Origin: Hemiscyllium ocellatum
Lineage: Eukaryota
Reading direction: 5' to 3'
Length of the DNA: 64,000 nucleotides
Assembly (NCBI RefSeq): GCF_020745735.1
Contig: NC_083409.1
Span: 9,723,534 to 9,787,533 of the forward strand
Part shown: positions 20,821 to 42,660 of the stretch, in pieces
Numbering within the stretch: the stretch's first letter is position 1
Layout: every line of letters begins with the position of its first letter
Program-made: the position numbers and the translations under genes
The notes under the pieces: generated by a model
Told to the model about the DNA's origin: nothing
The model's database searches: none
The model's input: the letters and a program-made list of their open reading frames with translations, nothing else

Positions 20821-21855
20821 TCCTGGTCACCACACTCTGGGAAGAATGTGATTGTACCTGAGAGGGTACAGGGGAGATTTCCCAGGATGCTGCCTGAATG
20901 TGAGCTTTGAGCAGTGAAGGCTTAAAAGGGACCTGATAGAGAGAGATAAGATTATTCAGGACAGTGATAGGGTGGGTAGGATGGCACTTTTTACATGAGT
21001 AAAGGACTTAATAACCTGGTACAGAGATTGAAGGTAACACAGACATGGACACGTAGAAACTTGGAGCAGCAGTAGGCCATTCGGCCCTTTGAGTCTGCTC
21101 TGTCATTCAGTATGATCATGGCTGTATCAATTTTTGAATGTCATCATTTCTTCGAGGGTCGGTGTGGGCTTGTCGGGCCAAATGGCCTGTTTCCACACTG
21201 TAGGCATTCTATGATCTATGGCTGATCCTCTCTCTCAAAGCCATATTCCTGCCTTCTCCCCATTCTCTTCAAGCTGTTAAAATGTAAAACAATTATCTCT
21301 CTCTTTTTCTTGAATATATTCAGTTCCTTGTCCTCCACAGCCTTCAGTGGTAGAGAATTCCACAGGTTGACCACCCTCTGAGTGAAGAAATATTTCCTCA
21401 TCTCAGTCCTAAATGGTCTACCCCGTACCTCCCTTAAACTGTGTTCCCTGGTTCCAGACTCCCCAACCAGGGGAAACCTCCTCCCTGCCCAGCCCTGTTA
21501 CAATTTTATATCTTTCAATCAGATCCCCTCTTATCGTTCTGAACACGAGTGAGTCCATGGCCAGGCGAGTTCGAGAGTTGGAGAGTGAGAGGAGAGTTGA
21601 GAAGAAATGCTCTCACCCAGAGGGTGGTGGGAGTCTGGAACTCACTGCCTGAAAGGCTGGTTGAGTCAGAAAATCTCGTGACATTGGAGCAGTGTTTAGA
21701 TATTCCCTTGTGTTGTTGTAACCTCCAGGGTAACGGGCCAAGAGCTGGAGGATGGGATTAGTGTCATCAGATCTTTGTTTACCAGCACAGACACAATGGG
21801 CCAAATGGCCTCATTCAGTGCTATTCACATCAATGCCTCTGAGACAGAGAGAGAG

Positions 21856-21954
21856 AAGAGGAAGTGTGAGGGGCTGACGTGGCTCTCTCTGCCTGATGCC
21901 ATTTACATACTGAGGAACACCCAGTGAGACTCTCACAGGCTGCAGCTTTATAAA
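21856..21954 (+). promoter_or_regulatory. Ig light-chain V promoter: ETS/PU.1-like site, CRE/UPRE-like site, variant octamer, TATA box
   Basis: AAGAGGAAGTG 21856-21866, TGACGTGG 21875-21882, ATTTACAT 21901-21908 (one mismatch to octamer ATTTGCAT) and TATAAA 21949-21954, all 60-160 nt upstream of the leader ATG. The octamer-then-TATA layout is the known IgL promoter arrangement. Factor assignments are motif-based only. Confidence 0.75.
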
Positions 21955-22014
21955 GCAGAGCCCAGTGAAGGGAGAGTTTATCAGGAACCAGGCACAGGGA
22001 CAGGAGCACACACC

Positions 22015-22063
22015 ATGATTTCACACATCCAGTTAATTTGGCCCCTGGCATTCTGTGTTGCAG
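22015..22063 (+). CDS. IGKV: Ig kappa-type light chain, leader exon (MISHIQLIWPLAFCVA-G)
   Basis: CACCATG Kozak context, 16 codons plus 1 nt encoding a hydrophobic signal peptide, then phase-1 donor G|GTACAA. A 186-nt intron follows, ending at acceptor CCCCTCAG| (22249). Confidence 0.9.
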
Positions 22064-22249
22064 GTACAAATCTCTCTCCTTCCACCTTGAATCTTTAGCT
22101 GCTCTCCATTTCACTCCAATTCCACTGACTTGTGATTGAAGGGAAAATGCTGAAACCAGAGGAATGCTCAGTGTCTCCAACAATCTCTCATTTGACAGGC
22201 TCTTTCTGTGACAGTTCTGACTGCATTGTGTTTCTCTCTGACCCCTCAG

Positions 22250-22579
22250 GTATCAGTGGGGACATCAGCATGACCCAGTCTCCCCCGGTGCTGTCAGTGG
22301 GACTGGGCCAGACCACAACCATCAGCTGTAAGGCCAGTCAAAGCATTAGCATCAACCTTGCTTGGTACCAGCAGCGAGAAGGTCAGAAACCCTCTCTCCT
22401 GATCTACAATGCAGCAACTCGATTCACAGGAGTCTCCGATCGATTCACCGGCAGTGGATCAGGGACCAGTTTCACCCTGAAAATCAGCAACATTCAGAAT
22501 GAGGATGTCGCTGACTATTACTGTCAGCAGTATTACCGCTACCCTTTTACGTTCGGCAAAGGAACCAAGCTCAGACTGA
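22250..22579 (+). CDS. IGKV: Ig kappa-type light chain, pre-joined V-J exon ([12 protein letters not shown]...C...WYQQ...[22 protein letters not shown])
   Basis: Both V-domain Cys, WYQQ, the DxADYYC motif and the J motif FGKG are in one open frame. There is no RSS or intervening DNA between V and J. The exon ends at a perfect phase-1 donor CTG A|GTAAGT. The 330-nt length preserves phase with the leader and C exons. Confidence 0.95.
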
Positions 22580-22944
22580 GTAAGTAAACCTCAATCCTCT
22601 GTTATTAACCCTGTCAATACTGAAACATGGTAAAATACAGTTACTGATTTGTTGAAGGTGTTAGTGGGGAGCTGCAGTGAATGAAATGGTTGATTGAGGA
22701 GCACTGTGTCTAACAGGGTGTCCAGCTGTATTTCTTTACTTTCATGCCCTCTTTAAAAAAAACAAGATATAAGTCAGTCAGTTTTACTCACTGTGTGGAG
22801 GAGCTCTGTCCATTTGCAGCCTGTGGTCCCATTCCTGCAGCATGGAGTGAAATCAGTGAGTAGCCTCCTGCCAGTCTCAGTGTGACAGACCCGAGTTTGA
22901 TGTGAGCTCTTGCTCCCTGTCCCAGTCTCTGATCTCAATGACCT

Positions 22945-22977
<33 letters not shown>
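22945..22977 (+). repeat. (CAG)11 microsatellite in the J-C intron
   Basis: Eleven uninterrupted CAG units. Confidence 0.95.
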
Positions 22978-22979
<2 letters not shown>

Positions 22980-24575
22980 CAGTGAGACACCGAGCTCCCA
23001 CCTCCCCCAGCTTTAACTCTGCTCAATCACACAATCGCAGAACTGTTACAGTACAAAAAGAGGCCATTCCGTCCATCCTGTCTGGACTAGCTCTCCGATT
23101 GAGTAATTCACTGAGTGTCATTCTCCTGCCTTCTCCCTGCCACCCTGCACATTGTTCCTTTTCAACTAACATTCTCATTCCCTTCGGAATGTTTTAATTG
23201 AAGCTGCCTCCACCACACTCTCAGGCAGTGCATTCCACACCTTAACCACCCACTGGCTGAAAATGTTATTCCCCATCTCACTTTTGTTACTTTTCCAATT
23301 ACTTTCAATCTGTGGCCTCTCGGTCTCAATCCTTTCACAAGTGGAATCATTTTCTCCCTATTCTCTGTTCCAGGCCTCTCCTGATTTTGAATTTCTGGAA
23401 CAATTCTCCTCGCTGCCTTCTCCAAAAACTTGGAGGTGCCGATGTTGGACTGGGGTGGACAAAGTTAAAAATCACACAACACCAGGAAGCTAGTGCTTCC
23501 ACATTAACCTGTTGGACTATAACCTGAAGTTGTGTGATCTGTAACTTTCTCCAAAGAAGACAGTCCCAAATTCTCCAATCTATCTTCATAACCGATATTC
23601 CTCATCCCTGGAATGATCTTTGTGCATATGTTTGCCAGCTCCACAAAACATTCACCTCTTTCCTGCATTATTCACATTATTTATGTCCCTCATGATTTTA
23701 TAAACCTCTATAAGGTCACTCCTCAACCTCCGGCACTTCAGGGTAAAAGATCTCAGCTTTTCCAGCCTCTAATGGTCACGGAGTCATACAGCGTGGAAAC
23801 AGGTCTTTCAGTCTAACGTCTCCATGCTAACTAGATATCCAAAACTGACCTCATCCCATTTGCCAGCATTTAGCCCACATTCCTCTAAACACTTCCTATT
23901 CATGTACCCATCCAAACATCTTTTAAATGCTATAATTGTATCCGTCTCCAGGACTTTTTCTGACAGCTCGATCAATGCACTCACCACCCTCTGTGTGACA
24001 AGTTACCCCTCAGGTCCCTTTTGGATCTTTTGCCTCTCATCTTAAACCTATACCCTCGAGTTTTGGATTCCCTTTCCCATGGCAAAGACCTGGGATGTAC
24101 ACCCTGTCCATGCCCGTCATGATTTTATAAACATCTATAAGGCCACCCCTCCGATCCTGCAGGAAAAATAACCCGTCTATTGAGCCTCTTCTGACAGCTC
24201 AAAGCCTCCAGTTCCAGGCAACATCCATGTAAATCTTTTCTGCAGAATTTTAAGTTTAACAGCATCCTTCCTATCACAGGATGATCAGAATTGTTCACAT
24301 TATTCCCAAATTTCCTGTACAGCTGCAAATGATGTCCCAACTCTGATACTTAGTGCAGTGACCAATAAAGGGAGTTAACCTTCATCTCCCTGTGACTGCA
24401 TTGTCAAGGAATAATGCCCCTACCCCTGCCCCTGCACCTGCCACTGCACCCCGAGGTCACTTTGTTGAGCAACACTCCACAGGGCCCCACCATTAACAGT
24501 ATAACTCCTGCCCTGGTTTGACTTGCCAAAATGCAACATCTCACATTTATCTAAATTGAACTCCATTTGTCACAC

Positions 24576-24787
24576 GTTTAGATCAGAGCGGTGCTGGAAA
24601 AGCGCAGCAGGTCAGGCAACATCCGAGGAGCAGGAAAATCGACGTTTCGGGCAAAAGTCCTTCATCAGGATTCCTCTCATCGAAACGTCGATTTTTCTGC
24701 TCCTCGGATGCTGCCTGACATGCTGTGCTTTTCCAGCACCACTCTGATCTAAAGTCTGGTTTCCAGCATCTGCAGTCCGCACTTTTG
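24576..24787. mobile_element. Palindromic Penelope-end element with TSD (family members at ~855-975, 5443-5531, 6712-6873, 7871-7980, 58247-58418)
   Basis: Inverted arms TGCTGGAAAAGCGCAGCAGGTCAGGCA.../...TGCCTGACATGCTGTGCTTTTCCAGCA. TSD TCCATTTG(T/C)CACAC at 24562-24575 and 24788-24801. Confidence 0.85.
24637..24672 (-). ncRNA. Minimal hammerhead motif in a palindromic element
   Basis: The minus strand reads AAUC-CUGAUGA-A-GGAC(UUUU)GCCC-GAAACGUC-GAUU. The core is intact with one stem II mismatch. Confidence 0.55.
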
Positions 24788-27399
24788 TCCATTTGCCACA
24801 CCTCTGCCCATTTCCCCAAATGATCAAGGTCCCACTGTACTCTCAGATAAGCTTCTTCATTATCCACTGTACCACCAATTTTGATGTCATTTAACAAACT
24901 TGCCATAATTCCTATATTCACATCCAAATCATTTATTTAAATGATGAAAAGCCGTGGACCCAGCACCAATCCTTGTGGCACACAGCTGACATCTGATCTC
25001 CAGTCTGAAATGCAACCCCGTACCACCATTCTGTCTCCTATCTTGAAGTCATTTTTTTTACCCAAATGGCTAGCTCCCCCTGGATCCCATGTGGTCTAAC
25101 CTTACTAATCAGTCTACCATGTGGAGCCTTGTCAAATGCTTTGCTGAAGTCCATAGTGTCTACTGTTCTGCCTACATCAATCTTCTCTTCAAACAACCTC
25201 AATCATGTTAGTGAGACACGATTACCATGCACAAAACTGCATTGATTGTCCAAATGCATGTAAATCCTGTCCCTCAGAATTCACTCCAATAACTTACCCA
25301 GCAATGACATCAGGTTCACTGGTTTATAGTTCACTGGCTTTTCCTTACAACCTTTCTTCAATAATGGCTAACATTAGCCAACCTCTCTGGTTCTTCAGAA
25401 CCTCACTCATGGCTGTCAGTCAGAAACATACATCAGCAAGGGATCCAGCAATCTCTTTCCTCGCTTTCCACAATGTCCTGGGATACACCTGATCAGGTCC
25501 TGGAGATTTATCTACGGTCTTGCACTTTAACTCATCTTCTTCTGTAATGTGGACTTGTGTCAAGACATTACTATTTACTTCCCAAGTTCCCAAATTTCCA
25601 TGTCTTTCTCCATGATAAATACTGACCTGGAATATTCATTTAAGACCTAAACCATTTCCTGTGGATCCACCCAGAGGTACATTGTTCATCTTCATGGGGC
25701 CCTATTCTCTCTCTAGTTACTCTTTTGTCCTTTTCTTATTTACCATAATTCTACCACTTTTGCCCTTGAGTAAGTTCAGGAATTGTTTGCCCTCCTTCAA
25801 ATGTATCTCGACTATACCTGGTCCACATCCTCTACTATTCTTTTCAGGATTTTCCTGCCAACCTTTGATCCCACTTTATTCAGATCCGATACATCCATAT
25901 CCTACAGAAGCTGGCATTTTCCCCAGTGAAGATGTTTGACCCTGAAAAGGCCTTTGTTCTTTTCTACCGTCACCCTCAACTTTGTGATACAATGATCACT
26001 CTTCCTTAAGTGTCCTCTCACTGACACTTGATCCACTTGGTCCTCCTCATTCCCAAGATCCAGATCTAGCAGAGCCTCCTTTCTCATTGGACTGGAAACA
26101 TGCAGCTGGAGAAAATTCACATGAACACACTCTCACGACTCTGGCCCCTCTGTCCTTCACACTGCTACTACCCCAGTCTATATTCAGAAATTAAAGAAAT
26201 GCCCCCCAACCCCATTTATAATGACTATTATATTTGCAGGTCTCTGTAAATTCCTTACAAATGTATTCCTCTAAATCCTTCCCACTGGGTGGTGACTTAT
26301 TGACTGCACTGATGATTCTGTGGACCTTGGTGTTTCTCTCTGATAGTCCCTCCTGGCTTCCACAGCCCTGCCAAGTTAGTTTAAACCCTCTCCAACAGCA
26401 TGAGTAGACCACCTCAAAGGAATTCAGTGCCAGCTCTGTTCAGGTCTATCCAGGTCCCATCTCCCCCAGACGCAGTCCCAATGTCACAAGAATCTAAAAC
26501 CCTCCCTCCTGGATTCTCTTTCCAGCCCCACAGACACTTGTGTTATCCTCCTGTTCTTCTTCTCACTTGCCTGGGGCACTGGGAGTAATCTGAAGATTCC
26601 TACTTTTGAGTTCCTGATGTTAATTCCCTTCTGAGCTCCCTAAATTCTGACTGCAGGACTACATCGCTTTTCTCCCTCTGTCACTGGGACCGATGTTGCC
26701 TGTTCCCCCCTCCCCTCAGGGTGCTCTGCAGTCGCTCAGTGACATCCTTGACCCTGGCACCAGGTAGACAACACACCATCCTGGATTCCCATCTGCAGCT
26801 GCAGAAACACCTATCGACTGCCCTCACTCTCCAATCTCCTCTCACTATCACTCTTCCAGTCTTCCTTATACCACCCCCCTCCCCAATACAGCTGAGCCAC
26901 CAGTGGTGCCATGGGTTTGGCTCTGGCTGAACTCCCCAGATGAACCATCATTTTCTTCAGGATTCCAAACTGAATCCTGTTTGGAGAGTGGGATACATTC
27001 AGGGGATTCCTGTACTAGCTGCCTGGTCCTTTTGGACTGTCTGCTGCTCCCCCATTCCCTCTCTCCCTGCATACTCTGAAGCTGCAGAGTGACCACATCT
27101 AGAAACGTGCTCTTCACGGAGCTCTCAGCCTCACGGATGTTTCGCACTGACACCAGCTGCTGCTCAAGCTCCGAAACCCAGAGCTTCAACTGCTGTCACT
27201 GACCACACTTCCTGCACTCTTGGTATTCCAGGAACTGGGAAGCATTCTGAAATTCCCACATGGATGCACACTCTCTCCACTCTTTGGTTATCTCTTGGCA
27301 AAGTTCTGATGACAAACAGCTACAGCAGGTCTCACAGTCCAGTGGGTTCAGTGTTCCAGGGTTTTGGGAAAACTGTCCAGAAGACTTTAAGAAATAGGA

Positions 27400-30300
27400 G
27401 CAGAAATCAGCCATTCAGCCCATTGAATCTGCTCTGCCATTTGATCTTGGCAGATATGTTCCTCACCCCATTCTTCTGCCTACTCCACAGGAACGTTCGA
27501 TCTCCTTAATAATCACAAACCTATCTATCTCTGTCTTAAATTCACTTCGTGACTTGGCCTCCACTGCCCTCTGTAGCAATGAGTTCCACAGATTCACCAC
27601 CCTCTGGCTGAAGAAAGTCTTCCTCATCTCAGCTCGAAAGGTTGGCCCTTCATTCTGAGGCTGTGCCTTGGTTACTGAGTCTCTCCTGTTTTTGGAAACA
27701 TCTTCACCATATCCACTCTACCCAGGCCTATCAGTATTCTGTAAATTTCAATTAGGTCCCTCCTCATCCTTCTAAACTCCAGTGAGTACAGACCCAGAGT
27801 CCTCAACCACGCCTCATATGACAAGCCCTTCATCCCCAGGATCATTCTTGTAAACCCCTCCAATGCCAGCACATTGTTTCTTAGAATATGGGTCCCAAAT
27901 CTGCTCACAATATTCCAAAGTCAGTCTGACCAGAGCCTTACACAGCCTCAGCAGTACATCTCTGCTCTTGTATTCTGGCCCCATTGAAATGGATGCTAAC
28001 ATTTCATTTGCCTTCCCAAGCACAAACTGGACCTGCCTGTTAACCTGAAGGGAAACCTGAATAAGGTTTGTGCTTTAGATTTCCAAAGGCTTTCCTTATT
28101 TTGCAAACAGTCTTTGCATCTCTTCTTCCTCCCAAAGTACACACCCTCACACTGTTACACATTGTATTCTATCTGCCACGTCTTTGCCCACTCTCCAAGC
28201 CTATCTAGGAAATTTTACAGCCTTCTCACTTCCTCAACACTACCTGTCCCTCCACCTATCTCATGTCACCTGCAAACTTAGCAACAATGTCTTCACTTCC
28301 TTCATCCAGATTGTTAATGTATAACGTGAATAGTTATGGTCCTAACATTGACACCTGCAGAACTCTACTCGTCACCAGCGGCCATTGTTCCTCAGGCTCT
28401 GCTTTATGCCAACCTGCCAGTCCTCAATCCATGCCCTACATTGCCCCTAATACTGTGGGCTCTTATCTTATGTTAAATGCCTTGTGGAAATCCAAATAGA
28501 TTACTTCCTCGGACTCTCCTTTGTCTGACTGGCTCATTGCCTCCTCAAAGAATTCTAACAGATTTGCCAGGCATGACGTTTCCTTGATGAAGCCATTGCA
28601 CTTCCAATCCTCTGCAATTTCATCCTTAAATTGAAGTCTAAAACCTTACCAACAACTGAGTCCTGGCTAACTGGCTGATAATGTCCCATCTTCTACCTCC
28701 CTCCATTCTTAAACAGGGGTGGTATGTGAGCCATTTTCCTGTCCCTTGCCCCCACCAAATCCGTCCTCATCTCACCTGCACACCGTGACTCCATTGATTA
28801 CTGAAACATCATCACCAATGCCTCCACAATCTCCTCAGTGATCTCCTTCAGAACACACTGGTGTAGTTCATCCAGTCTGGGTGAGTTATCCACATTCAGA
28901 CCTTCCAGCTTCCCCAGTACCTCCTCCTTAGTGATGGCCACTACACGCCCCTCCGACCCCTGACAGTCTTGAAGTACTGGTACACTGCATGTGTATTCCA
29001 TGATGCAGACTGATTTTAAATAAATATTCAAATCTTCTGCTATTCCTTCATTTCCTCTTATTCTTTCTCCAGCCTCATTTTCCAGTGATCCATAGTCTAT
29101 TTTTGACTCCCTCTTCCTTTTTATACACCTGATAAAACTTCTGCAATCTTCTTTTATATTACTGGCTAGATAACTCCCACATTTCACCTTCTCCACCCTT
29201 AATGATTTTTCAGTTATCCCCTGCAGGTTTTTAAAGGCTTCCTAATCCTCGGGCTTCCCACTATTCTCCACCACATTGTGTGCTTTTTCTTTTGCTTTTA
29301 TGCTGTCCTTGATCTCCCTCATCAGCCATGGTTACATTGTCCTCCCCTTGGTATGTTTCTTCCTTTTTGGGATGAATTCCTGTTCTGCTTCCTGAATTAC
29401 CCCCAGAAGCCCTGCTGTTTGCTGCCCCACCATCTTACCTGCTCGGCTCCCTTTCCAACCAACTCTGGCCAGCTCCTTCCTCATGTCTTTCGAGTTACCT
29501 TTACTCAATTGAAATACTGTTCCATCTGATTGCAGCTTCTCTCTCAAACTACAGGGGGAATTCTATCATATTATGGTCACTTATCCACAGGGATACTTTC
29601 ACCTTAAACTAACTCATCATGTTTGCTTCAATACGCATCACTGAATCCAGACCTGCCTGTTCCATCATGGCTCAACCACAAGCTGCTCCAAAATCCATCT
29701 CGTCGACATTCCATGAAATCCTTTCCTTGAGATACACTACCCAGCCCACCTATCCATTGAAGTCTGCCCTGACCTTTTCTGTCTCCTGATTGATTTCCTT
29801 CCCCACACCCTGATTACTGCTTGGAGACCTGGACATAACTTGCATCAGATTCTTTATTTATTGCAGTTCCTCAGCTCTACCCACACAGATTCTACACCTT
29901 CTGACTCTACATCACTTCTTGCTATTGATTTAATTTCATTTCTCACTAACAAGGCAACTCTTCCCCCTCTGCCCATCTGCCTGTCCTTTTGATAGGATAT
30001 ATAACCTTGGGTATTTAGGTCCCAGCCCGGATCCCCTTACAGCCATGTCTCTGTGATACCCACAACATTGTACCTGCCAGTTTCAATCTGCACTACAAAC
30101 TCATTGTGTATACTGTGTGCATTTAAGTACAACACACTCAGTCCGACATTGACTGCCCTCCTTCTCATCATTGTCCCCTTATCTGCTGTGCTTTATGTTC
30201 GATTCCTGATCCTTTCTGTACTCTCTGTCCTTTTACATCTTCTAGAAACTTGAATAACCTTTCCTGAGCCCTCCTCCACTTTAACTGGTTTAAATTCCTT

Positions 30301-31480
30301 AGGAACTCAATTTACCTCAATTTGTGGCATCACTTTTACTCCCTTACTCGGAATGCTTTGTGCATTTAGATACAACCTCTTTAAATTTGTACTATTATTG
30401 ATTTTCCATGCACTTTCATGGTTCCTTCGATGTTCAAAACTTCCATCCCTTTCTTTTATTTTTTGGTAACAATCAATCCCATCACTAACCAGCAATCCTA
30501 CCTTCTCCTTTACCTTCCATTTTCTCATTTTCCATCCAACTGAACCAAATTCCTTTCTCTTTGGGTTGAGTTCAGGCCAATATCATTAAGCCAACATCAT
30601 TATTGCTCTTTGATCTCAGTGCTTCTAGTGGGATCTTGCTGTGTAGAAACTGGCTGCCACGTTACTGACATTGCAACAGTGACTGCTTGTCAAACAAAAA
30701 TGCCTGAAAATGTCTTTCAGAGAGCCTAAAATGTTAAGGGCTGGATTGAAATACAGTTAGAGTCAGAAGGATGGACAGCACAGAATCAGACCCTTTGGTC
30801 CAACTCGTCCATGCTGATCAGATATCCGAAATTAATCTAGTCCCATTTGCCAGCATTTGGCCCATATCCCTCTAAACTCTTCCTATTTACATACCCATGC
30901 CTTTTAAATGTTGTAATTGTACCAGCCTTCACCACCTCCTCTGGCAGCTCATTTCATACATTTAACACCCTCTGAATGAAAACGTTGTCCCTTAGGTCCC
31001 TTTTAAATCTTTCCCCTGTCACCGTCAGCCTATGCCCTCCAGTTCTGGACTCCCCTGCCCTGGAGAAAAGATCTTCTCTATTCACTCTATCTATGCCGCT
31101 CATGATTTTCTAAACCTTTATACGGTCACCCATCAACCTGCAATGATCCAGGGAAAACAGCCTCAGCCTATTCAGCCTCTCCTTTTCACAGTAACACTCC
31201 AACCTTGGCAACATCCTTGTAAATCTTTTCTCAAACATTTTAAGATTCACAACATTTTTCCTGTAGCAGGGAGACCAGAATTGCACACAGTATTCCAAAA
31301 GTGCCCTAACCAATGTCCTGTACAGCCGCAACAGCTCCCAACTCCAATAATCAATGCACTGACCAATAAAGGAGAGCAAACCAAATGACTTTGTCACTCC
31401 CCTACCTACCTGCAACTTCATCTTCAAGGAACTAATCTTCATTTTTTGGATGAACTGAGAGTCTTTCAGTTGTGTAAGAT
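27400..31480 (-). mobile_element. Further antisense CR1 LINE fragments in the J-C intron
   Basis: Peptides LEYCEQIW, DNSPRLDELH..VLKE and LEYCVQFWSPCYRK. Reverse-complement 3' UTRs at ~27400 and ~30760. Confidence 0.85.
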
Positions 31481-33971
31481 GCCATTCCATGGCACTGTTG
31501 GATGAAGAGAAGGCAGTTCCCCCTGGTGTCCCTGGTCAATATTTATCCCCCAGTCAAAATCACTCAGAATGTATTTCTCTGCTAATTATCACATGGTGTT
31601 TGGGATCTCGCTGTGCACAGTCTGCTGGAAAGATCCATTGGGACATGCTGAGCTGGGGGCAGGTGCTACATCAGTGCAAGTCTTTCTTTAAGGGTTGGAG
31701 TCTCCTGATCCGGATCCTCATCCATTGTCTACGCACTCTCACCTTCCGGGGTCATGAGGTCATTAGGAGCAGTGACCCTGTCTGACCCTAGGACACTGAG
31801 ATTCTTTGCAGCCTCACCCTTGACCTCAGCCCAATATTGTGCAGCAAGGTTTGAAATATAATCTAGAACCTTCTACACAGACACCCCAACGTGACTGTTT
31901 CCTGAAGTGTGTGGATCCGAGTCTGCTCCAATGTTCTCGGATAAAGTTCTCCTGATCTGTGGGTGATCGGAGGTTTGTTAAAGAGATATCACGCTCCATC
32001 CCACTTTCCAGCTCTTGCTCCATAGCTCTGGAGGTTTCGCTGTTTCAAGTGAATATCTAAGTGTTTTTTCAATGTGATGAAGGTTTCTGCCTCTCCCACC
32101 CTCTCAGACAGTGAGTCCCACATCCCACCAAGCTCTGGGTGAAAACAAATACCCTCAACTCCCCTCTAATCCTGCCCCCAACTGATTTCAATCTCTCCCC
32201 AGGGTTATTGCCCTCTGTGTTGGTGGAAATCAGTCCTTCCTACACACCCTATCCAAGCCCCTCATTATTTACACACCACCATCAAATCTCCCCTCAGCCT
32301 CCTGCGATCCAAAGAAAACATTCCCAGCCAATTCAACCATTCCTCAAAGCTCAAGGTCTCCATTCCAGATAAACTACTCCTCTGTCCTGGTCTCCTGTGG
32401 GATCACATCCTCCCTGTAATGTGGTGACCAGAACCGTACACTGTTCTCTCACTGTGCTCTAACTGGGGTTTTATACAGTTCCAGAAGAAACAAACTCCTT
32501 GCTTTCACAGTCAACCAAAAATGAGATAAGGGAGGTGATGGTCTAATGGTGTTATTGCTGAGCTGTTAATCCAGAGATCCAGGTAATGTTCTGGGGACCA
32601 GGGTTAGAATCCAGCAGATGGTGGCATTCAAATTCAATCGAAACAAAATCTGCAATTTAGAGAGTAATGATGACCACGAAACCATCGTTGATTGTTCGGA
32701 AAAAAAGTCATCTGATTCCCTAATGTCCTTTAGGGAAGGAAACTGCCATCCTTACCATGTGACCCCAGACACACAGCAATGTGGGTGACTCTAAACTGCC
32801 CTTTGGGTGATTCGGGATGGGCAATAAATGCTGCCGATCCAGCAATGCCCTCATTCCATCAAGGGAAAAGGAAAAACAGTTTCTCCCATGTGTCTTCTGA
32901 ACCACCTCACTGACCTGCATTAATCACCATGGCCACATCTTCCAGCTCCACACCCATCTGACTTCCAGCTTCAAACTGACGAGAGACATTCCTTCACTAT
33001 CTGAGAAACAGATAGAAACATCAAACACAGGAGCAGCAGTAGGCCATTCGGCCCTTCAGACCTGCTCCACCATTCAATATGTTCATGGCTGATCATCCAA
33101 CACAGTCCCCTGTTATGCTTTCTCCCCACATTCTTTGATCCCTTTAATCCTAAGAACTATATCTAATTCCTTCTTTAATACACATTGCATCTAATTCCCT
33201 TTTGCTGGAAAAATGGATGACAATTATTGAGTTGGATGCAATTGGCTGATGAGCCTTTTCGGTCTCTATGAATCTTTGACCCTATTATTATATATTATGA
33301 ATAACTGGGTACCAAGGACTGACCCCTGTGACACCCTAAGTTGTAATTATCTGCCATTCAGAAAAAGACTCCTTCTTTCTGTGCTGTCGGCCAACCAGTA
33401 CCCAATCCATGTCAGGACATGGTCCCAATCCTCTTGTTCATTTGGTCTAGATCTGGAAGTCCCACCTTTACTCTTTGTAGGAACAGATTCTGAATGATCT
33501 CTGACTCGTCCTTCGAGGGCTCCCACTGCCCTGACACTGATTTCCCATCATGTCACTGCTTCCAGTCCACTTTTACCAAAGCACCACACAGTTTAGTTAA
33601 ATGAAAACTTTTACACTTACTGCACTTCCATCCATACTCTCAATCTCACTGAGATTTGAGCACTGTCGCTGAAATGCTCCCACAGTGATAACCCTTCCAG
33701 TTGCTCACAGTCATTCCATAAACGATGGTCCAGAACTGTCCCTTCTCTTTTACCATCACCTTCTCAGGGGCAATTAGGGATGGGCAATAAATGCTGGCCC
33801 TGCCAGTGACTCTCACATTCCCAGGAAGCAATTTGAACAATGCCTGTTCATTTGTCAGGTTTATTCTGTATTGACGAAAAATATTCTAAAAGATTGTAAT
33901 GCCAGTGAATTTTGTGAAGGTTGAATTCCCTTTGAAAGACAGGGATTAAAATTGCTCCTCTTATCTTTCAG

Positions 33972-34300
33972 GCCGTGAAAACTCTCAGCCCAAGCTGACC
34001 CTGCTGTCCCCCTCCCCGGAGCAGGTCAATGCCAAGGGCACTGCCACCCTGGTGTGCCTTGCCAATCACTTCTATCCCGATGAGCTGGAGGTGCAGTGGA
34101 AGAAGGACGATGCAGTCATTTCGGACGGGGTTCAGACCAGCAACTACCTGCGAGCTTCGGACAGCACCTACAGTGTCAGCAGCCTGCTGACCCTCTCTGG
34201 GTCTGACTGGGAGTCCAACGCTCGCTTCTCCTGTGCCCTCACCCACGTGACCCTCCCCTCTCCCCTCAGCAAGAGCATCAGGAGATCAGAATGTGTGTAG
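33972..34300 (+). CDS. IGKC: Ig kappa-type light chain constant exon C1 (S-RENSQPKLTLL...VCLANHFYP...W...FSC...RSECV*)
   Basis: Acceptor TCTTTCAG|GC. The J-end A plus GC gives AGC (Ser) in frame. Ig C1-set Cys/Trp/Cys are present, and the terminal ECV carries the heavy-chain-linking Cys. The spliced CDS is 49+330+329 = 708 nt = 235 aa plus stop. It resembles shark type III/NS4 (kappa) C regions as I recall them. Confidence 0.95.
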
Positions 34301-34829
34301 AGTGTTTGAGACAGTCCACAGAGGAGACACAACTTTAAATAGAACAGGGCTGAGCTGGCAGGACAAAGGTCATTGTCAGCACTGAATTTCAACTCTCTTC
34401 CTTCTCAGGACTGCTCAGGGAACCTTCTGAGGTTTGGATGTTAAAGCAGGTCATTGTGACAGTGTCAAGAGAGCTTTATGCAATGTCAACCATCATGCTG
34501 TACCTTGTCCTGGGAGTGTTTGATGGGGACATGGTTGACTTGTGATGCCAAGTAAAATCTCTTGAAGTTGCTGAAGACTGTCAGCTGTACAAAACAATGT
34601 GGACCTCAGAATTCTCTGCTTCAGTAAACCAGATCTTCTTCCTGCTCAGCCACCAGTTCCAATTTAAGGTTTTGTCACTGTTTAAAGGGACAGGATTATC
34701 GTGTCATTGAGAAAATCTCCACAAGTGTTTTTCTCAAGCTCCAATGTGGCTGTGAATTTGAGCAGCTTCCTCTGTCTGGGCTGTTAATTGCAGTTGTTTT
34801 TTTTCTGTCAATGTAAATCTGGAAAAGGG

Positions 34830-34835
34830 AATAAA
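34830..34835 (+). terminator. Polyadenylation signal of the light-chain gene
   Basis: AATAAA about 530 nt after the stop, followed by a GT-rich tract. It is conserved at the homologous position in both other C copies (47865-47870 and 60960-60965, minus strand). Confidence 0.75.
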
Positions 34836-34889
34836 GATGAAGATTCAGTCTCTGTCTCTGTGTGCTTTGGAAATAGATGACCTCCCCCC

Positions 34890-35125
34890 CCGCACATCAG
34901 TTGATTGGCTGCATTTCAGCAGGTCGTTGTCAAGATTGGCTGGTTAGCCTGTCAATCAATTACAATCATCAATCATTATTCATTTTCAAATGATCCCTTT
35001 AATCAGGGATTTGTGTAGGTTACAAGATTCCAAAAAGAACAGAAACTGAAAGCTGTTAGGACTCAATAAATACAATCTGATGCATTCCCTCTTCACTTTG
35101 TTGGTCCAGGCCCAGCTGATGGGAT
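34890..35125. promoter_or_regulatory. Candidate 3' regulatory module downstream of C1
   Basis: E-box abutting ATTGG (34904), second ATTGG (34935), GAAACTGAAAG IRF-type motif 35042-35052 and CAGCTG 35113-35118. All are retained with the same spacing in the C3 copy. Function is inferred. Confidence 0.5.
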
Positions 35126-36454
35126 CGTACTGTGCAATCTCTGCTACATGTTGAGTAGCTGCTGAAACAATCTTCTGCCATTCACCAACGTTATCGGCCT
35201 TATGTGTCTCTCTGAGCATGAGTGTTTAACTTAATGTTGCCTGCAGGTCTCTGAGTGTGGGTGTGTTACTCAGTGAGACACACACAGACAGCACTGAGTA
35301 ACAACACCCACATTCGGAGACTCCTGCAGGCAGCATGGAGTGTGAGCATGTTACTCAGTGTGGCTCTCTCTCAGTGTGAGTGTGTTACTCTGTGCTGCCT
35401 GTCGGTGTCTCTCTGAGGTCTGTGTCTCCAAGCGATGGATTGAGAATGGGCTTTGTGCTGGGGATTGAAGATCAGGCTTTAATCTTCTCAAATCATGAAT
35501 GAAAAACAGTTCAGCTGATTCAGTCTGAGATGGCAGCTCATTCAGATGGCCAAAGTTTCAAATCACACATAGTCAAATGGGTTTATTTGGAAATAAAAGC
35601 ATTTGGAGCACTACTCCTTCATCAGGTAGCTGGAAGGATCGTTGGACACAGAATTTATGGTCAATTCAGATGGCAGCTGAGAAAGGTGGATACTGAGAGT
35701 GTATTCTCAGTAAGTGAGGAATTTCAGAGGCAGTGGGCACTGTGCTCCCAAATGTGTTGCTCAATTCCGAGGAGAATTTCCGAATCCAAGGTCAGAGCAG
35801 TCGTGGCTGCCTGCCCAGCAAATGCTGGCTCCCCATAGTCATATTTCAGTGTTTAATTAACCCAAAACAAGGTGCAGCAATATTACCTTCCAGGGAGGGG
35901 AGCTGTCTGAGGGAGGAAGGTTGAATGCTTGCAGCCCCAAGAGAGGTTGCGGTGGATTAATGACAGGTATGACCACCATGAAGGTGCCACTTTCTCTCCC
36001 CCTGTCCCACCTGTGATGACCCTCAGGTTAAAAGTGTGACTGCTCTGGGATGATGACCACATTCCTGGGTGATGGAGGGAAGGTCAACTGCTCCCAAAGG
36101 CAGCACAAGCTGGATCGAAGGTTAAACAAGAGTAAGCATGGGGAGATTGAGGGTGACAGAAGGAGGGGGTTGGTTGGCAGGTTGTTATTCAGAGTCAGGT
36201 ACCAGAGTATCAGTCCTTCTGACATGCCCCTTTCTATCTGTCAGCCGGGGCTCCCTGATTGGACAAAGGTAACTGTCCCTGTCAGGGAACTCATATTTTA
36301 TCAAAAAGAATAAAACATTTATTGAACAAGGAGCTCAAGAGTTAAACAACACTGGACAAAATAATGGTTTGAAAGGTTTCATTATGAACATTGCAAATGA
36401 GATTTGGTGAGGACCTTTTTCACTCAACGGTTGGTGGGAATCTGGAATGGACTG

Positions 36455-36965
36455 TCATAGAATCCCTACTGTGAGGAAACAGGTTATTTGGCCCAACAAG
36501 TCAAACGTGGAGTTTGCACGTTCTCCCCGTGTCTGCGTGGGTTTCCTCCGGGTGCTCCGGTTTCCTCCCACAGTCCAAAGATGTGCGGTCAGGTGAATTG
36601 GCCATGCTAAATTGCCCGTAGTGTTAGGTAAGGGGTAAATGTAGGGGTATGGGTGGGTTGCGCTTCGGCGGGTCGGTGTGGACTTATTGGGCCAAAGGGC
36701 CTGTTTCCACACTGTAAGTAATCTAAAGTCCACACTGATCCTTGGAAGTGTAACCAACCCAGGACCCAATCTCCTATCCTATTATCCTACTTTTCCCCTC
36801 CCTGATCATTATGGGTAATTTAGCATGGCCAATTCACCTAACCTGCTTGTCTTTAGATTGTCAGAGGAAACCAGAGTACCCAGAGGGAACCTACGCAGAC
36901 ATGGGAAGAATGTGCTAACTGCAGACAGACAGTTGCCTGAGGCTGGAATCAAACCCGGGTCCAAA
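36455..36965. mobile_element. Minus-strand HE1-type SINE with a 5'-truncated plus-strand HE1 (36507-36727) nested inside
   Basis: The reverse-complement SINE tail (36455-36505) and body (36730-36965) flank a young plus-strand copy. AAGTC lies on both sides of the insert. Confidence 0.75.
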
Positions 36966-36969
36966 CACT

Positions 36970-38995
36970 CAGAAAAGCCTTGACTTCACTCCAGCCTCTG
37001 CCTCCACTTCTGCCCATCCCACTCTGCAACCAAGACTGCAACTACATTTCCCAGGGTTACCCCTGAGTCCTACTGCCTACCTGCAGCCAGCCAGCACATT
37101 CGCTCTTCCTCCTCACCCATACACCCCCACAGTGCACCCTCTCCCTCCACTTCTCCCTCTTCACTTCATCCCCACCTTCCCACTCCCCCCTCCTCACTCC
37201 ACTACAAACCTCCGCCCCAATCTCCTTTCTCTCCCTCACCCATTCCCCCATGCTACATCACAACCACCCCTCGCCCACCACATGCCATCACCCTTTCTCC
37301 CCAAAAACTCCACCCCGAGCCTTGTTACATATTTACTATGCATCCCGACCACAAACATTCTGAGGCCAAAAGGTCCATTCTCATGGAAGGACTCACATTC
37401 ATTCCCCTGTGCCTCCACCTCAACAAATCCCACACCATCCAGGATGTGGAGCTCTTTTGCCACCTCTACCTCCGTATCTTCTTCTTTAACACAAACTCAC
37501 AACCTCCCTCTGAGGACCCCTACTCCTGCCTCCAATGTTCCTCCTCTGCTTGGTCACGACCCTGCTCCCCCTCACCCTCAATAACTTTTACTTTAACCCC
37601 TCCCATTTCCTTCAAATCCAGGGGGTGGCCATGGGCACCCAAATGGGTACCAGCTACTTCTGCCTCTTTATCGACAGTCCCTCTTCAGTATCTACACAGG
37701 CTCTGTTCCCCAACTCTTCCGCCATTACATCAATGACTGCATCAGTGCAGCATCCTGCACTCAGGCTGAACTGGAACAGTTCATTGACTTCACCCACAAC
37801 TTTCACACCATCTTCAAATTCCCTTGGTCCATCTTGGACACCTCCCTCCCCTTTCTTGACCTCTCCATTTCCAATTCTGGTGACAATCTTCGGACAGACA
37901 TTTACTACAAAGCCACAGATTTCCATATCTAACTGGACCACACCTCATCCCATTCAGTATCCTGCAAGAACTCCATCCCATTCTTCCAATTCCTCTGCCT
38001 CCTCCCCATCTGCTCTGATGAGGAGACCTTCCACTGATCATAGATGTCCACCTATTATGAACAACGTGCTTTTCCTCCTTCTGTCATCCAACACACTCCT
38101 CCCTTTCCCACTCCACTGCTCTTAATCCAGCCCCCTCCAAACACAATTAAAACAGAGTCCCCACTGTCCTCACCTATCAGCCCACCAATCTCCGTATCCA
38201 AAACATCATCCTTAAACACTTCTGCTAACTCCAACTAGACCACACCACCAAATACATCTTCCTCTCCCCACCACTGGATGCCTTCCATAAGGACCGTTCT
38301 CTTTGACAATTCTTGGTTTGCGTCACTCTCCCACCTACCCTCCCGAACCCCAGGTACCTTCCCTGCTACTCAAAACGATGCAAAGCCTACTGGTACCCTA
38401 ATCCCTCACCTCCATCCAGGGCCCCAAGCAGTCCTTTCAGGTGAGACAGAGGTTCACCTGCCTCTCCTCCAACCTAATTCACTGCACCAGGTGCTCCCAA
38501 TGTGGTCTTCTCTACATCGGGAAGACCAAACATAAAGTTAGGGAATGGTTCACCGAGCATCTTAGCTGGGCCCGGAGGGGCTGACTTTACCTCCCAGTCA
38601 CTATCTATTTTAATTCCCCTTCCCACTCCCTTTCTGAAATGACCATCCTTGGCCTCCTCCATTGGCACAACAAACCAAACTGCAAATTGGAGGAACAACA
38701 CCCCATATTACGCCTGGGCGGCTGACAGCCCAGAGGACTCAACATTGAGTTCTCCAATTTCATATAACCACCCTTCCCACTCCCCTGTCTCCCTTCCAAA
38801 TCTCTCTCCCTCCCTTCCACTCCTTCCTGCCAGCTACCACATTCATTCCTCCCATTGACCAACCAGGTCATAACTTCTACCTGTCATCACCAATCCCCAC
38901 TTCATCATCCCGTCCCTGCCACCCCCTTTATCTTAGCTCTCCCTACACCCAGCCCCCCCCACCCCCATTCCTGAAAAAGAGTTACACACCGAAAT
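36970..38995 (+). mobile_element. Decayed Penelope-like element (RT plus GIY-YIG)
   Basis: RT motif FLQIQGVAMGTQMG, frameshifted YINDC, LPFLDLSIS and GIY-YIG-like CSQCGLLYIG.TK. The 3' end carries a degenerate hammerhead core at ~38968-38998. Confidence 0.85.
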
Positions 38996-39003
38996 GTCAA
39001 CTA

Positions 39004-39627
39004 GGGTGGCACGGTGGCTCAGTGGTTAGCACTGCTGCCTCACAGCACCAGACACCTGGGTTCAATTCCTGCCAGTCTATGTGTAGTTTGCACATTCTCC
39101 CCGTATCTGCCTGGGTTTCCTCCGAGTGCTCCAGTTTCCTCCCATAATCCAAAAATGTGCAGGTCAGGTGAATAGGCTGTGCTAAACTGCCCACAGTGTT
39201 AGTCAGGGGTAAATATTGGGTAGAGGAATGGGTTTGGGTGGGTTGCTCTTTGGAGAGGTGGTGGAGACTTGTTGGGCTGAAGGGCCTGTTTCCACACTGT
39301 AGAGAAGGGGGCAGCATGGTGGCTCAGTGGTTAGCACTGCTGCCTCACAGCACCAGGGGCCCAGGTTTGATTCCAGCCTTGGATGTCTGTCTGCGTCGAG
39401 TTTGCACATTCTCCCTGTGTCTGCATGGGTTTTCTCCGGGTGCTCTGGTTTCCTCCCACAGTCCAAAGATGTGCAGATCAGGTGAATTGGCCATGATAAA
39501 TTGCCCATCGTGTTAGGTGCATTAGGCAGAAGGGAAATGGGTCTGTGTGGGTTACTGTTTGGGGTCAGTGTGGACTGGTTGGGCTGAAGGGCCTGTTTTC
39601 ATACTGTCGGGAATCTAATCTAATCTA
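39004..39627 (+). mobile_element. Two tandem HE1-type SINEs (39004-39303, 39307-39627)
   Basis: Two consecutive head-V-domain-tail units. Confidence 0.9.
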
Positions 39628-40494
39628 CTCCGCTGCCTGGCTTGCTGTGTTCCTCCAGCCTCCTGTCTATCTACATTGAATGGAAACAGCAGGAAAGGGC
39701 TGAACAATCAAGTATCAGGGACATTAACAAATGGGACATGAAACAGATAGATGCATTGAGGTGGTCATTCACAAAGAGAAAACCAAACTGGAAATGAAAC
39801 ATTCAGACACAGTGGACCGAATTTAATATCAGAAAATGTGAGACCATGCACTTTGTCAGAATAATCTAAAGGCCGACTAGTATTTAAATTGTGAGAGATT
39901 CCAAAAAGTGCAGTACAGAGTGATCTGGATGTTCTTGTGCATGGGACACTGAAAGTTAGTGCAGGTACAGCAAGGAATTGAGAAGGCAAATGGAATTTTC
40001 ACCTTTATTGCTGGGGGTTGGAATTTAAAAGTAGAGAAGTCTTGTTAAAACTGTGCAGTGTGTTAGTGAGCCTCCATTTGGATTATTGTGTGCAATTTTG
40101 GTCCCTGTATTTAAGAAAAGATGGACAGCCATTGGAGTCTCCCTCCTGCTCCTATTTCCCATGTCCTTGTGTGCTCCAGTGTCCTTCCCTCACAGCAGAG
40201 CTGGCTGGAGCCTGCCTGCAGTAACAGCCTCCAGTCTCTGGGTGGTGCTGCCAAAAGATCTGCCTGGCCCAAGCTGTCACAGTTCCCACGTTACAATAAT
40301 GTCAGAAGTATTCCATTGGCTGCAAAACATTTTCAAACATCTTACGTTCAAGGATGGTATAACAGAAAGATAATTCTCTCTCTTTTTATATTTTATCTCC
40401 ATGCCTTCCCACCTATTACCTAACAACATTCTACACTTGTGTCAAATCCAGAATAAATCATGAATCTCTGGGAGAGCTTAATCTATGACAACAC

Positions 40495-42660
40495 TGGGAT
40501 TAATGACCACATCCTCAGTGGGCTTTGTGGGTGAAGGTCAATAGCAGTCTCATTGTGACTTGATCTGAGTTGGTCTGAGTCAGTCAGTGTTATTGTTCTG
40601 GGTAGAGACAGTACTGACCAACTTCAGACCCTGTGATCTGCTTGAGACGAAGGGTTATCTGTGCAGGGCTTTCACACATGGCTCACTCACATAGTGAAGC
40701 AGGGATTCCCCATTTTGCAAGAGTAAATGGAACTAACAAACTGGGTGGGCATGACACCCCCACCCTGTCCCCTGAGAGTGGGGACAGGAACAGTAATGTT
40801 CTCAGAGAGAAAGGATGGTAAAAATGGTACCCCACAGAGAGAGAGAGGACAGGAAGCATGACACTCCCCAGAGACAGGCAAACAGTATCTGTCTGCTCCC
40901 CACTTTCGTGTTGTGACATATGTCGTTGGGAAATGGGTTTGGTTTATATTTTCTCAATTGTATTTAGGTTTGATGAGGTGATTTGGTAACAATGATTCCA
41001 ATTCCATATTTTGTGTGGCAGCCGATCTACTGAAGGTCATCCTTTCATTTGAAGGTTGCCCAGGTTTCTGTCCAGGCTGATGCAGTATGGTCTACAGTGC
41101 TGCTCCTATTGGGCTAAACCATCACACACGAGGGAATCTGACAGACACCTTCTCTTTGTGCTGGCAAAGGGAGAGATTTGTTTATACTGTAATTGCGGCC
41201 AAAGAAATTAGTTAGTGGATGTAATTCCAGCTGAATATAATGTTCTGATGTTCATGATGGGATTAATCACGACAGTTCCCACTTGCCTTTACACTGATGG
41301 TGGAACAGGAAGTCACCACGCAGTGATCTCCTGGCTCACACTGAGAAACAAAGTTGATGGTATAACTGCAGAGAGCAAGACAATGGCTTGGACTCACCGA
41401 ACAACCAGAGGCTTCAGCCAACAACTGGGTCACAGACAAATGGAGTGTGTAAACGCTCAGTATCTCAGGGAACAAACACAACTACTGAGTTACAAAACTG
41501 AACAGGACTTTTTATGAAAATTGGCATTCCAAAAATAAATTCCAAACACAATATGTGTAAAAATTGAGTGCAATCTCATTACAAAGACTACATCATTTTC
41601 ATTGAAAGCTGGACGATAATGAGATGAGAATTCAAACAACCACCCACTCCATCACACGGTGTTCTCATCATAACACATTTGCAAGCCTCTTAAAACATGG
41701 AAGGAGAGGGAAACATTGCAAACTATATTACCATGAGTGAGGATCCATTAAAAACTAGGATCATGATGTTAAATGCTCCCAGCCATAAACAACACTGATG
41801 CATTCACATCATTAGTTTGTTAAATGATGTTAAAAAGTCTGCCAACCACTTTCATGAAGAAGGAATATTTAAATCTCAAGAGGCATTGATGACTTTTTTT
41901 CAGGACTATAGCAAGGAAGCAGCAGCTGACATATGAACTCCAACAAACTAATGATAATAGGCACTGAATCCAGAGCAGGCCCCTGAGAGAGAGAGAAAAA
42001 TCAACAGCAGAGATCTGTCCAGTGCTGGGAGCATTTTAGACAAGACACCTTGTTGCCAGCAAGTTACTGCAGCTTGAAAGCTCCAGTAGGTTCAGAAAGA
42101 GAAAAAGGACATTGTGCAGATTGTTGAACAGGCCCCTACACCTGGGCCTGAGGCAGGAGCCCAAGCTCCAACACACTGGCCTCACTTCACACCAACCTTC
42201 ACACAGTGCGGGGTCATGAACTCCGGCCATCAATCCCTCGGGGACCGGGACGGAGTGAGGGAACAGGGACAATTGTAGAAGAGTCAATAAGGAGTAAAGC
42301 AAGATGGAGAGGGTGTGTTGGAAAGGGGTGAGAGGAGGAAATATACTTTGTGCCACTCAGTACAGACATCATCTACGTGTATCACAGAATGAACAAACAA
42401 AAGTCACATCAAAGTACTTTTCTTATCACAGGGGACATTTTCATTGTAGTGTGATAAGTACCCTACTTCTGAAGCTGTAGACTCTCTCTATGGGTCTCTC
42501 CAGATTGAGCCTGTTCGCTCCAAGCAAGGCCCCAGTTTATTTTTTACTGATCAGGGACAGTGAAGCAGCTGCCCTCTAGTGGCGAGAGAGAGCTTGCACG
42601 GCTGCTGAGGATTATGGGTAAAGTCCCCTTCCATTCGCGCCCACACAAACCAGCAGCCAC
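40495..42660 (+). repeat. Distal 3'-flank block of cluster 1, inverted homologue of ~55505-57105
   Basis: Matching sub-blocks: 40500-40740 vs 57105-56860, 41030-41180 vs 56545-56385, 42109-42372 vs 56070-55808, and 42500-42610 vs 55674-55562. Confidence 0.9.
42566..42583 (-). promoter_or_regulatory. CTCF consensus motif (reverse orientation)
   Basis: The minus strand reads GCCACTAGAGGGCAGCTG. The core CCACTAGAGGGCAG fully matches CCASYAGRKGGCRS. Confidence 0.65.

What the first reader, a model, noticed from the sequence alone, without database searches (positions are those of the whole stretch)
22015..34835. Complete, in-frame, pre-rearranged (germline-joined) kappa-type light-chain gene
Seen: V runs directly into J ([14 protein letters not shown], a 9-residue Tyr/Phe-rich CDR3) with no heptamer, spacer or nonamer. 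All four splice sites are canonical and in phase, giving a 235-aa protein with promoter and polyA signal. Known: sharks have cluster-type Ig loci, and some nurse shark NS4/kappa clusters are joined in the germline by RAG action in germ cells. Inference: this is such a fixed-specificity gene that could be expressed without recombination, although a somatic rearrangement captured from lymphocyte DNA in the assembly cannot be excluded from sequence alone.
Basis: partly seen in the sequence, partly recalled or inferred. Interest (0 to 1): 0.78.

Follow-up and report, generated by a model that had tools for sequence, protein, structure and literature searches.

The report
Pre-joined shark kappa light-chain gene
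This is an intact shark antibody light-chain (kappa) gene whose V and J pieces are already fused in the assembled genome. It is a clean example of a kind of gene described in nurse shark in 2000, and this scan has met the same kind many times in this genome.

Summary
The gene has a leader exon (22015-22063) and a 186-nt intron. The fused VJ exon is 22250-22579, with CDR3 QQYYRYPFT followed directly by FGKG. After an 11.4-kb intron comes the C exon (33972-34300), and AATAAA lies at 34830-34835. All splice sites are canonical and the product is 235 aa. The window holds no RSS above chance and only this one J.

Two split kappa clusters of Chiloscyllium punctatum (L002, L004) are colinear with the window on both sides of the join at 86-90% identity. 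The window lacks exactly their RSS-to-RSS interval, which is 507 bp in L002 (V-CACAGTG-12-ACAAAAACC ... GGTTTTTGT-23-CACTGTG-J). About 3 nt are trimmed from V and 1 from J, with no clear N region. Promoter elements and both introns are retained, which is the signature of RAG-type V-J joining.

Support is indirect. A divergent joined kappa cluster exists in another assembly (L001). Unchecked scan notes list many other joined kappa clusters in this genome, some out of frame.

This matches the nurse-shark NS4 germline-joined genes of Lee et al. 2000. It is a new member of a known kind, and expression is untested.

The parts
21901..21908 (+). Octamer-like promoter motif ATTTACAT
   Evidence: It is invariant in the window and in three C. 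punctatum kappa clusters, L001, L002 and L004. Lee et al. 2000 report that joined and split NS4 genes share the same octamer.
21949..21954 (+). TATA box (TATAAA), inside the invariant block GCTGCAGCTTTATAAAGCAGAG, about 60 nt upstream of the ATG
   Evidence: Seen in the alignment and the sequence.
22015..22063 (+). Leader exon (MISHIQLIWPLAFCVA plus the first base of Gly)
   Evidence: The leader is identical to that of C. punctatum, Hemiscyllium and nurse-shark kappa chains.
22064..22249 (+). Leader intron of 186 nt with GT..AG ends
   Evidence: It is 96-98% identical to the leader introns of the split clusters L002 and L004. It has the same length as in nurse-shark NS4.
22250..22579 (+). Fused V-J exon (330 nt). 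The V part runs to 22545 and the J part from 22546/22547.
   Evidence: A single tblastn HSP and a single open frame cover it.
22543..22551 (+). V-J coding joint: the V end CCT is directly followed by TTTACG of J. It lies within the 9-codon CDR3 (22525-22551).
   Evidence: Split relatives have CCTCGA|CACAGTG at the V end and CACTGTG|GCTTCCG or |GGACACG at the J start.
22580..33971 (+). J-C intron of 11.4 kb. Its first ~850 nt are conserved among paralogs. The rest is colinear with the long intron of C. punctatum locus L003 and holds dispersed repeats.
   Evidence: It contains no J, V, C or RSS.
33972..34300 (+). Constant-region exon (C1-set) ending ...RRSECV followed by TAG
   Evidence: It differs at 2 of 108 residues from C. 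punctatum kappa models.
34301..34835 (+). 3' UTR up to the poly(A) signal AATAAA (34830-34835)
   Evidence: Homology with the L001 cluster and with the two other C copies in the window stops at about this point.

Best explanation
This is a germline-joined kappa (NS4/type III) light-chain cluster of a shark close to the bamboo sharks (Hemiscylliidae).

An ordinary split cluster has the layout promoter, leader, V-RSS12, about 500 bp, RSS23-J, long intron, C. In this cluster, V-J recombination of the RAG type took place in the germ line. It removed the RSS-to-RSS interval and left a coding joint with a few trimmed bases and no clear N region.

The result is a normal-looking transcription unit. 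It has an octamer-like motif, a TATA box, a leader, a fused VJ exon, a C exon and a poly(A) signal. It can encode one fixed 235-aa kappa chain without any somatic recombination.

Shown: the structure, the intact reading frame, the exact RSS-bounded deletion relative to split relatives, and the retained promoter and introns.

Inferred: that the joining happened in germ cells rather than in a lymphocyte clone of the sequenced animal, that RAG did it, and that the gene is transcribed. By analogy with nurse shark, transcription would be mainly early in life.
For: Structure and open frame.

No RSS above chance, and a single J in the window.

Colinearity with split clusters:
- Window 19684-22545 matches L002 1-2867 at 88.5% and window 22547-22807 matches L002 3375-3638 at 89.1%. 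The window therefore lacks L002 2868-3374, which is 507 bp.
- L004 shows the same picture: window 21842-22529 and 22549-23422 match at 89.6% and 85.7%, with 704 bp between them in L004.
- The missing piece begins at the V heptamer and ends at the J heptamer: CACAGTG-12-ACAAAAACC ... GGTTTTTGT-23-CACTGTG.

Regulatory elements: the promoter block with ATTTACAT and the TATA box is invariant between this gene and split genes.

Selection pattern: V framework dN/dS is about 0.35, CDR about 0.9-1.2 and C about 0.4-0.5 against paralogs. This is normal for a working Ig family.

Other joined genes: a different kappa-like cluster with contiguous VJ lies in an independent C. punctatum assembly (L001). RefSeq models P0063, P0064 and P0066 of that species also read V straight into J.

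Agreement with Lee et al. 2000:
- 186-bp leader intron;
- about 500-bp V-J spacer in split genes;
- joined genes give a product of about 550 bp with their leader and J primers. The positions of those primers in this gene are 553 bp apart, by my count and the primer sequences;
- joints with little N region;
- about 10% of roughly 50 genes joined.

Unchecked scan notes list many further joined kappa clusters on this chromosome, several of them out of frame.
Against: - Germline status rests on indirect arguments.
- No ortholog with the same CDR3 was found among database proteins. The best hit is 85% identical, and the exact VJ ORF is not in the collection.
- The true split progenitor is unknown, so the count of trimmed, P and N bases is approximate.
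- Expression was not tested. In nurse-shark adults, joined NS4 message was barely detectable.
- Being in frame is expected for one random join in three, so it is not evidence of selection.
Confidence: 0.85

Rival explanations
1. The join is a somatic V-J rearrangement of one B-cell clone in the sequenced tissue that was taken into the assembly consensus. The inherited allele would then be split.
For: Sequence alone cannot tell a somatic coding joint from a germline one. No reads could be laid on the locus. No identical gene was found in another individual or species.
Against: - An assembly consensus follows the majority of reads. One clone rearranged at one cluster among very many would be a tiny minority. 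This is inference from how assemblers work, not a test.
- The joint shows no clear N region, whereas somatic NS4 joints often do (Lee et al. 2000).
- Contiguous VJ kappa genes recur in an independent assembly (L001).
- According to unchecked scan notes, they also recur at many clusters of this same assembly, out-of-frame and decayed ones included. Repeated capture of somatic clones would not produce that pattern.
Confidence: 0.07
2. The fusion came from a process other than RAG. It could be a chance deletion, or a patch of gene conversion from a reverse-transcribed, rearranged light-chain message.
For: No RSS or signal joint remains to prove RAG action. The joint carries no diagnostic P nucleotides that can be assigned without the progenitor.
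Against: - Both deletion end points fall within about 3 nt of the two heptamer borders defined in L002 and L004. For a random ~500-bp deletion I estimate the chance of this at well below 1 in 1000.
- The leader intron and the J-C intron are retained, so a cDNA copy would have had to convert only a few dozen bases around the joint.
Confidence: 0.04
3. This is a relic of an ancestral V exon that was never split.
For: It lacks any RSS.
Against: - Its nearest relatives are split genes with 86-98% identical flanks and introns.
- In the V tree it sits inside a group that mixes split and joined genes (weakly resolved).
- Lee et al. 2000 reached the same conclusion for NS4.
Confidence: 0.01

Closest known systems
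Nurse shark (Ginglymostoma cirratum) germline-joined NS4/kappa genes R4, R7, R18, RE18, R6 and R19 (Lee, Fitch, Flajnik and Hsu, J Exp Med 2000, PMC2193156)
   Same: - Same isotype.
- Same layout: octamer, leader, 186-bp intron, fused VJ.
- The same roughly 500-bp V-J interval is missing relative to split sister genes.
- The distance between the leader and J primer sites is about 550 bp.
- The joints have trimming and little or no N region.
- Joined and split genes are mixed in one family.
- The gene is in frame and has an intact promoter, like four of their six.
   Different: - The species lineage differs. The C region is 2/108 residues from C. punctatum models but 11/108 from the nurse-shark cDNA P0071 (my count).
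- The CDR3 is different, so this is a separate joining event.
- A J-C intron of 11.4 kb is documented here.
- Germline origin and early-life expression were shown experimentally in nurse shark and were not tested here.
Chiloscyllium punctatum joined kappa-like cluster on BEZZ01000502.1 (locus L001, protein P0089)
   Same: V and J are contiguous in genomic DNA, the promoter block is conserved, and the leader, VJ and C exon structure is the same.
   Different: It is a divergent paralog: V is 67.5% and C 78.7% identical. Its CDR3 is different and longer (MQDYSVPQTLS), and the gene is compact at 4.4 kb. It comes from an independent joining event and is not the ortholog.
Split kappa clusters of C. 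punctatum (L002/P0002 and L004/P0009)
   Same: The flanks, leader, leader intron and post-J intron are 86-98% identical, and the promoter is the same.
   Different: They keep V-RSS12, a spacer of 0.5-0.7 kb and RSS23-J. They need somatic recombination to be expressed.
Wholly germline-joined light-chain isotypes (lambda/NS3/type II in all cartilaginous fish studied), and the joined sigma-2 partner of neonatal IgM1gj (review PMC4279169)
   Same: The VJ is fixed and encoded without recombination. The proposed role is in early life.
   Different: Those are other isotypes in which all or the dedicated genes are joined. Here a single member of a mostly split family is joined.

Membership tests
Cartilaginous-fish Ig kappa (NS4 / type III) light-chain cluster | Leader, V, J and C exon structure encoding a V-set domain and a C1-set domain with a C-terminal Cys | tested here: met
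   The product is 235 aa and ends SECV.
Cartilaginous-fish Ig kappa (NS4 / type III) light-chain cluster | The nearest relatives are kappa/NS4 chains rather than lambda, sigma or sigma-2 | tested here: met
   85% identity to C. punctatum 'immunoglobulin kappa light chain-like', 80% to a nurse-shark light-chain cDNA (its old database name is 'Ig lambda-like chain') and 71-72% to Heterodontus kappa. Mouse and human light-chain variable domains, including chains labelled kappa, are about 60% identical. No tree against the other isotypes was made.
Cartilaginous-fish Ig kappa (NS4 / type III) light-chain cluster | Kappa-type RSS geometry: a 12-bp spacer at V and a 23-bp spacer at J | tested here: met
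   It can only be tested on split sister genes. L002 has CACAGTG-12-ACAAAAACC at V and GGTTTTTGT-23-CACTGTG at J. The gene itself has no RSS.
Germline-joined Ig gene (sense of Lee et al. 2000) | V and J are contiguous in genomic DNA with the leader and J-C introns retained, so it is not a processed copy | tested here: met
Germline-joined Ig gene (sense of Lee et al. 2000) | The missing DNA equals the RSS-to-RSS interval of closely related split genes, and the joint is compatible with coding-end processing | tested here: met
   507 bp are missing relative to L002, about 3 nt are trimmed from V and 1 from J, and there is no clear N region.
Germline-joined Ig gene (sense of Lee et al. 2000) | The joined form is inherited: it is present at full dosage in non-lymphoid DNA and in several individuals | not testable with these tools
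Only indirect support exists (L001; scan notes).
Germline-joined Ig gene (sense of Lee et al. 2000) | It is transcribed without rearrangement, in nurse shark mostly in pups | not tested
   No RNA data could be reached. The exact VJ ORF is absent from the protein collection, which says little.

The most novel reading that the evidence does not exclude
This intact joined gene is not a neutral by-product. It would be a maintained, RAG-independent 'innate-like' kappa chain with a fixed QQYYRYPFT binding loop, used in the embryonic or neonatal repertoire. It would be one of dozens of joined clusters, showing that germ-line RAG activity is frequent and still ongoing in this shark lineage.
Probability: 0.12. 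Interest if true: 0.5.

Novelty: new member of a known kind. Interest (0 to 1): 0.2.

Why it matters
Germline-joined Ig genes show that RAG has reshaped inherited genomes, and they offer antigen receptors that need no recombination. This gene adds one clean, fully intact example with chromosome context:
- a long J-C intron;
- a tail-to-tail neighbour;
- a precise before/after comparison with split sister genes.

It changes no concept. Its practical value is as a well-defined target for asking two questions. Are such genes expressed early in life in bamboo-type sharks? How many independent joining events does a large kappa array carry?

Tried and rejected

Fetching related DNA:
- DNA of the chromosome-level C. 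punctatum assembly could not be fetched for P0063, P0064 or P0066 (file or gene range too large). Their contiguous VJ therefore rests on the protein models only.

Searching for the same gene elsewhere:
- Exact look-up of the VJ ORF and the VJ exon product found nothing.
- The spliced 235-aa protein has no reference and was not typed in, so it was never used as a query. Instead the stop-free frame 22129-22581 was used with region 42-151 to reach full-length chains.

Other analyses:
- The V-region tree is too weakly supported to count joining events. It only shows the gene nested among split and joined genes.
- The PDB search with the C exon did not separate kappa from other C1-set domains.
- Pfam on ten long ORFs of the window gave no credible hit; the one weak match is far below its cut-off. 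Rfam on the whole window gave nothing.
- Looking for the CDR3 in the scan's notes gave nothing.

Not determined and not touched:
- The species was not determined.
- N runs in L002 and L003 were left as they are.
Full report
**What is there.**
- The + strand carries a complete light-chain transcription unit.
- The promoter has an octamer-like ATTTACAT (21901-21908) and TATAAA (21949-21954).
- The leader exon is 22015-22063 (MISHIQLIWPLAFCVA plus one base), followed by a 186-nt GT..AG intron.
- The VJ exon is 22250-22579.
- The J donor is CTGA|GTAAGT. It is followed by an 11.4-kb intron and the acceptor TTTCAG|GC.
- The C exon is 33972-34300, ending RRSECV-TAG. The 3' UTR runs to AATAAA at 34830-34835.
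- The spliced reading frame is 235 codons plus a stop.
- Pfam finds V-set (8.9e-18) and C1-set (9.4e-22).
- Inside the VJ exon the frame reads [21 protein letters not shown] without interruption.

**No recombination signals.**
- The exact RSS consensus has no match in the window.
- With three mismatches there are one 12-spacer and two 23-spacer hits. This equals the chance expectation of about 0.9 each, and all are far from the gene.
- The J motif occurs only once in 64 kb, inside this exon.

**What was lost, judged against split relatives.**
- Protein searches led to kappa genes of the brownbanded bamboo shark, Chiloscyllium punctatum, and to nurse shark, Hemiscyllium, Cetorhinus, Scyliorhinus and Heterodontus kappa chains.
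- Many V models from the older C. punctatum assembly read straight into 'HSDT..YKNL', which is the translated heptamer and nonamer. Those genes are therefore split.
- I fetched four C. punctatum loci.
- L002 and L004 are split clusters.
- Window 19684-22545 matches L002 1-2867 (88.5%) and window 22547-22807 matches L002 3375-3638 (89.1%).
- Window 21842-22529 and 22549-23422 match L004 9829-10518 and 11223-12080.
- The alignment and the motif scan show that the 507 bp absent from the window begin at the V heptamer and end at the J heptamer.
- In L002 the V side reads ...TACCCTCGA|CACAGTG-12-ACAAAAACC.
- In L002 the J side reads GGTTTTTGT-23-CACTGTG|GCTTCCGTTCGG....
- This is the kappa-type 12/23 arrangement.

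**The joint.**
- The window reads ...TACCCT|TTTACGTTCGG.
- Measured against the coding ends of L002 and L004, V has lost about 3 nt and J about 1 nt. Nothing needs to be called N region.
- The true progenitor is unknown, so these counts are approximate.
- Both deletion end points lie within about 3 nt of the heptamer borders.
- Both introns are retained, which excludes a processed copy and makes a chance deletion very unlikely.

**The gene looks usable.**
- The promoter block is invariant between this gene, the two split genes and the joined paralog L001.
- The leader intron is 96-98% identical to those of the split genes.
- Against paralogs, V framework dN/dS is about 0.35, CDR dN/dS about 0.9-1.2 and C dN/dS about 0.4-0.5. 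This is the usual Ig pattern, but it describes the family rather than this lineage alone.
- Cys23, Trp35, Cys88, FGXG, the two C-domain cysteines and the C-terminal Cys are all present.
- An in-frame joint is expected one time in three by chance, so it is not evidence of selection.

**The long intron is normal for this family.**
- Locus L003 of C. punctatum is colinear with window 22900-31474 over most of the intron.
- RefSeq gene ranges for related models are 9-12 kb.
- The intron holds dispersed repeats that also occur elsewhere in the window and no further Ig element.

**Germline or somatic?**
- Four indirect arguments favour the germ line:
  1. A consensus assembly follows the majority of reads, and one lymphocyte clone rearranged at one cluster of a very large array would be a tiny minority. 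This is inference.
  2. The joint lacks the N stretches typical of somatic NS4 joints, as Lee et al. noted for their germline-joined genes.
  3. A different kappa-like cluster with contiguous VJ lies on a 1.65-Mb scaffold of an independent C. punctatum assembly (L001). Three RefSeq models of that species also read V directly into J, while others read through the RSS.
  4. This scan's earlier notes list many more joined kappa clusters on the same chromosome piece and elsewhere in this genome, several out of frame or decayed, in an array of roughly 200 clusters. These notes are unchecked and I could not see the DNA. That pattern is not what occasional capture of a somatic clone would give.
- I put germline origin at about 0.9 and the whole best explanation at 0.85.

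**Comparison with what is known.**
- Lee, Fitch, Flajnik and Hsu (2000, PMC2193156) described exactly this in nurse shark NS4, now called kappa (PMC4279169).
- They found about 50 genes, about 10% of them joined, arising from at least five independent events.
- Their genes have a 186-bp leader intron and a 502-524-bp V-J spacer in split genes.
- Joined genes keep the same octamer.
- The joints show trimming and possibly P bases, with little TdT activity.
- Two of six joined genes are pseudogenes.
- Expression was detected in pups but hardly in adults.
- Their leader and J primers match this gene with one mismatch each and lie 553 bp apart here (my count and the primer sequences). That equals their ~550-bp product for joined genes.
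- The present gene differs only in lineage and CDR3. The C region is 2/108 residues from C. punctatum models against 11/108 from the nurse-shark cDNA (my count).
- I found no paper that surveys joined kappa genes in bamboo-type sharks. That does not make this a new kind.

**Verdict.**
- It is a new member of a known kind and of low interest.
- The scan has found the same thing repeatedly on other DNA of this genome.
- The species was not determined; the closest sequences are from Chiloscyllium and Hemiscyllium.

Noticed in passing
window 61488-61796 (-), deletion at about 61490: A second kappa C exon lies on the minus strand, 93% identical in protein to the first. It carries a 19-bp deletion that removes the last codons (RRSECV) and the stop. 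The C-terminal Cys is lost and the frame runs on for about 29 codons, so the constant region is probably defective. Its J and V lie beyond the window end.
   Followed up: partly
window 48532-48617 (-): An orphan 3' fragment of a kappa C exon with a 1-nt deletion, followed by a conserved 3' UTR. It lies close to the junction between the two inverted arms.
   Followed up: partly
window 33826-44880 versus 61945-50923: The two clusters lie tail to tail as arms of an inverted duplication of about 11 kb per arm, with the matching blocks at 70-83% identity. This agrees with the layout assumed in scan note s1-191610.
   Followed up: partly
window 22580-23420: The first ~850 nt of the J-C intron are conserved with all fetched paralogs: 86% with L004, 84% with L003 (over window 22900-23426 only), and 78% with L001 in an alignment that also spans the leader and VJ exons. 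This may be an intronic regulatory region. It holds a perfect (CAG)11.7 microsatellite at 22945-22979.
   Followed up: no
L004 about 11255-11262 (C. punctatum BEZZ01005289.1): The J segment of this split cluster has GG instead of GT at its splice donor (TTGAG|GAAGTA versus CTGA|GTAAGT here). The cluster may be unable to splice J to C.
   Followed up: no
L001 10232-10573 (C. punctatum BEZZ01000502.1): A divergent kappa-like cluster with V and J contiguous in the genome (CDR3 MQDYSVPQTLS). It is a compact 4.4-kb gene with an intact C exon, and it is an independent germline-joined gene in another assembly.
   Followed up: partly
proteins P0072, P0073, P0010, P0064 and P0066 (RefSeq and older gene models): Some automatic gene models of shark kappa clusters are artefacts. 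P0072 and P0073 translate through both RSSs. P0010 splices V directly to C. P0064 and P0066 start at an ATG inside the leader intron; the same in-frame ATG exists here at 22147.
   Followed up: no
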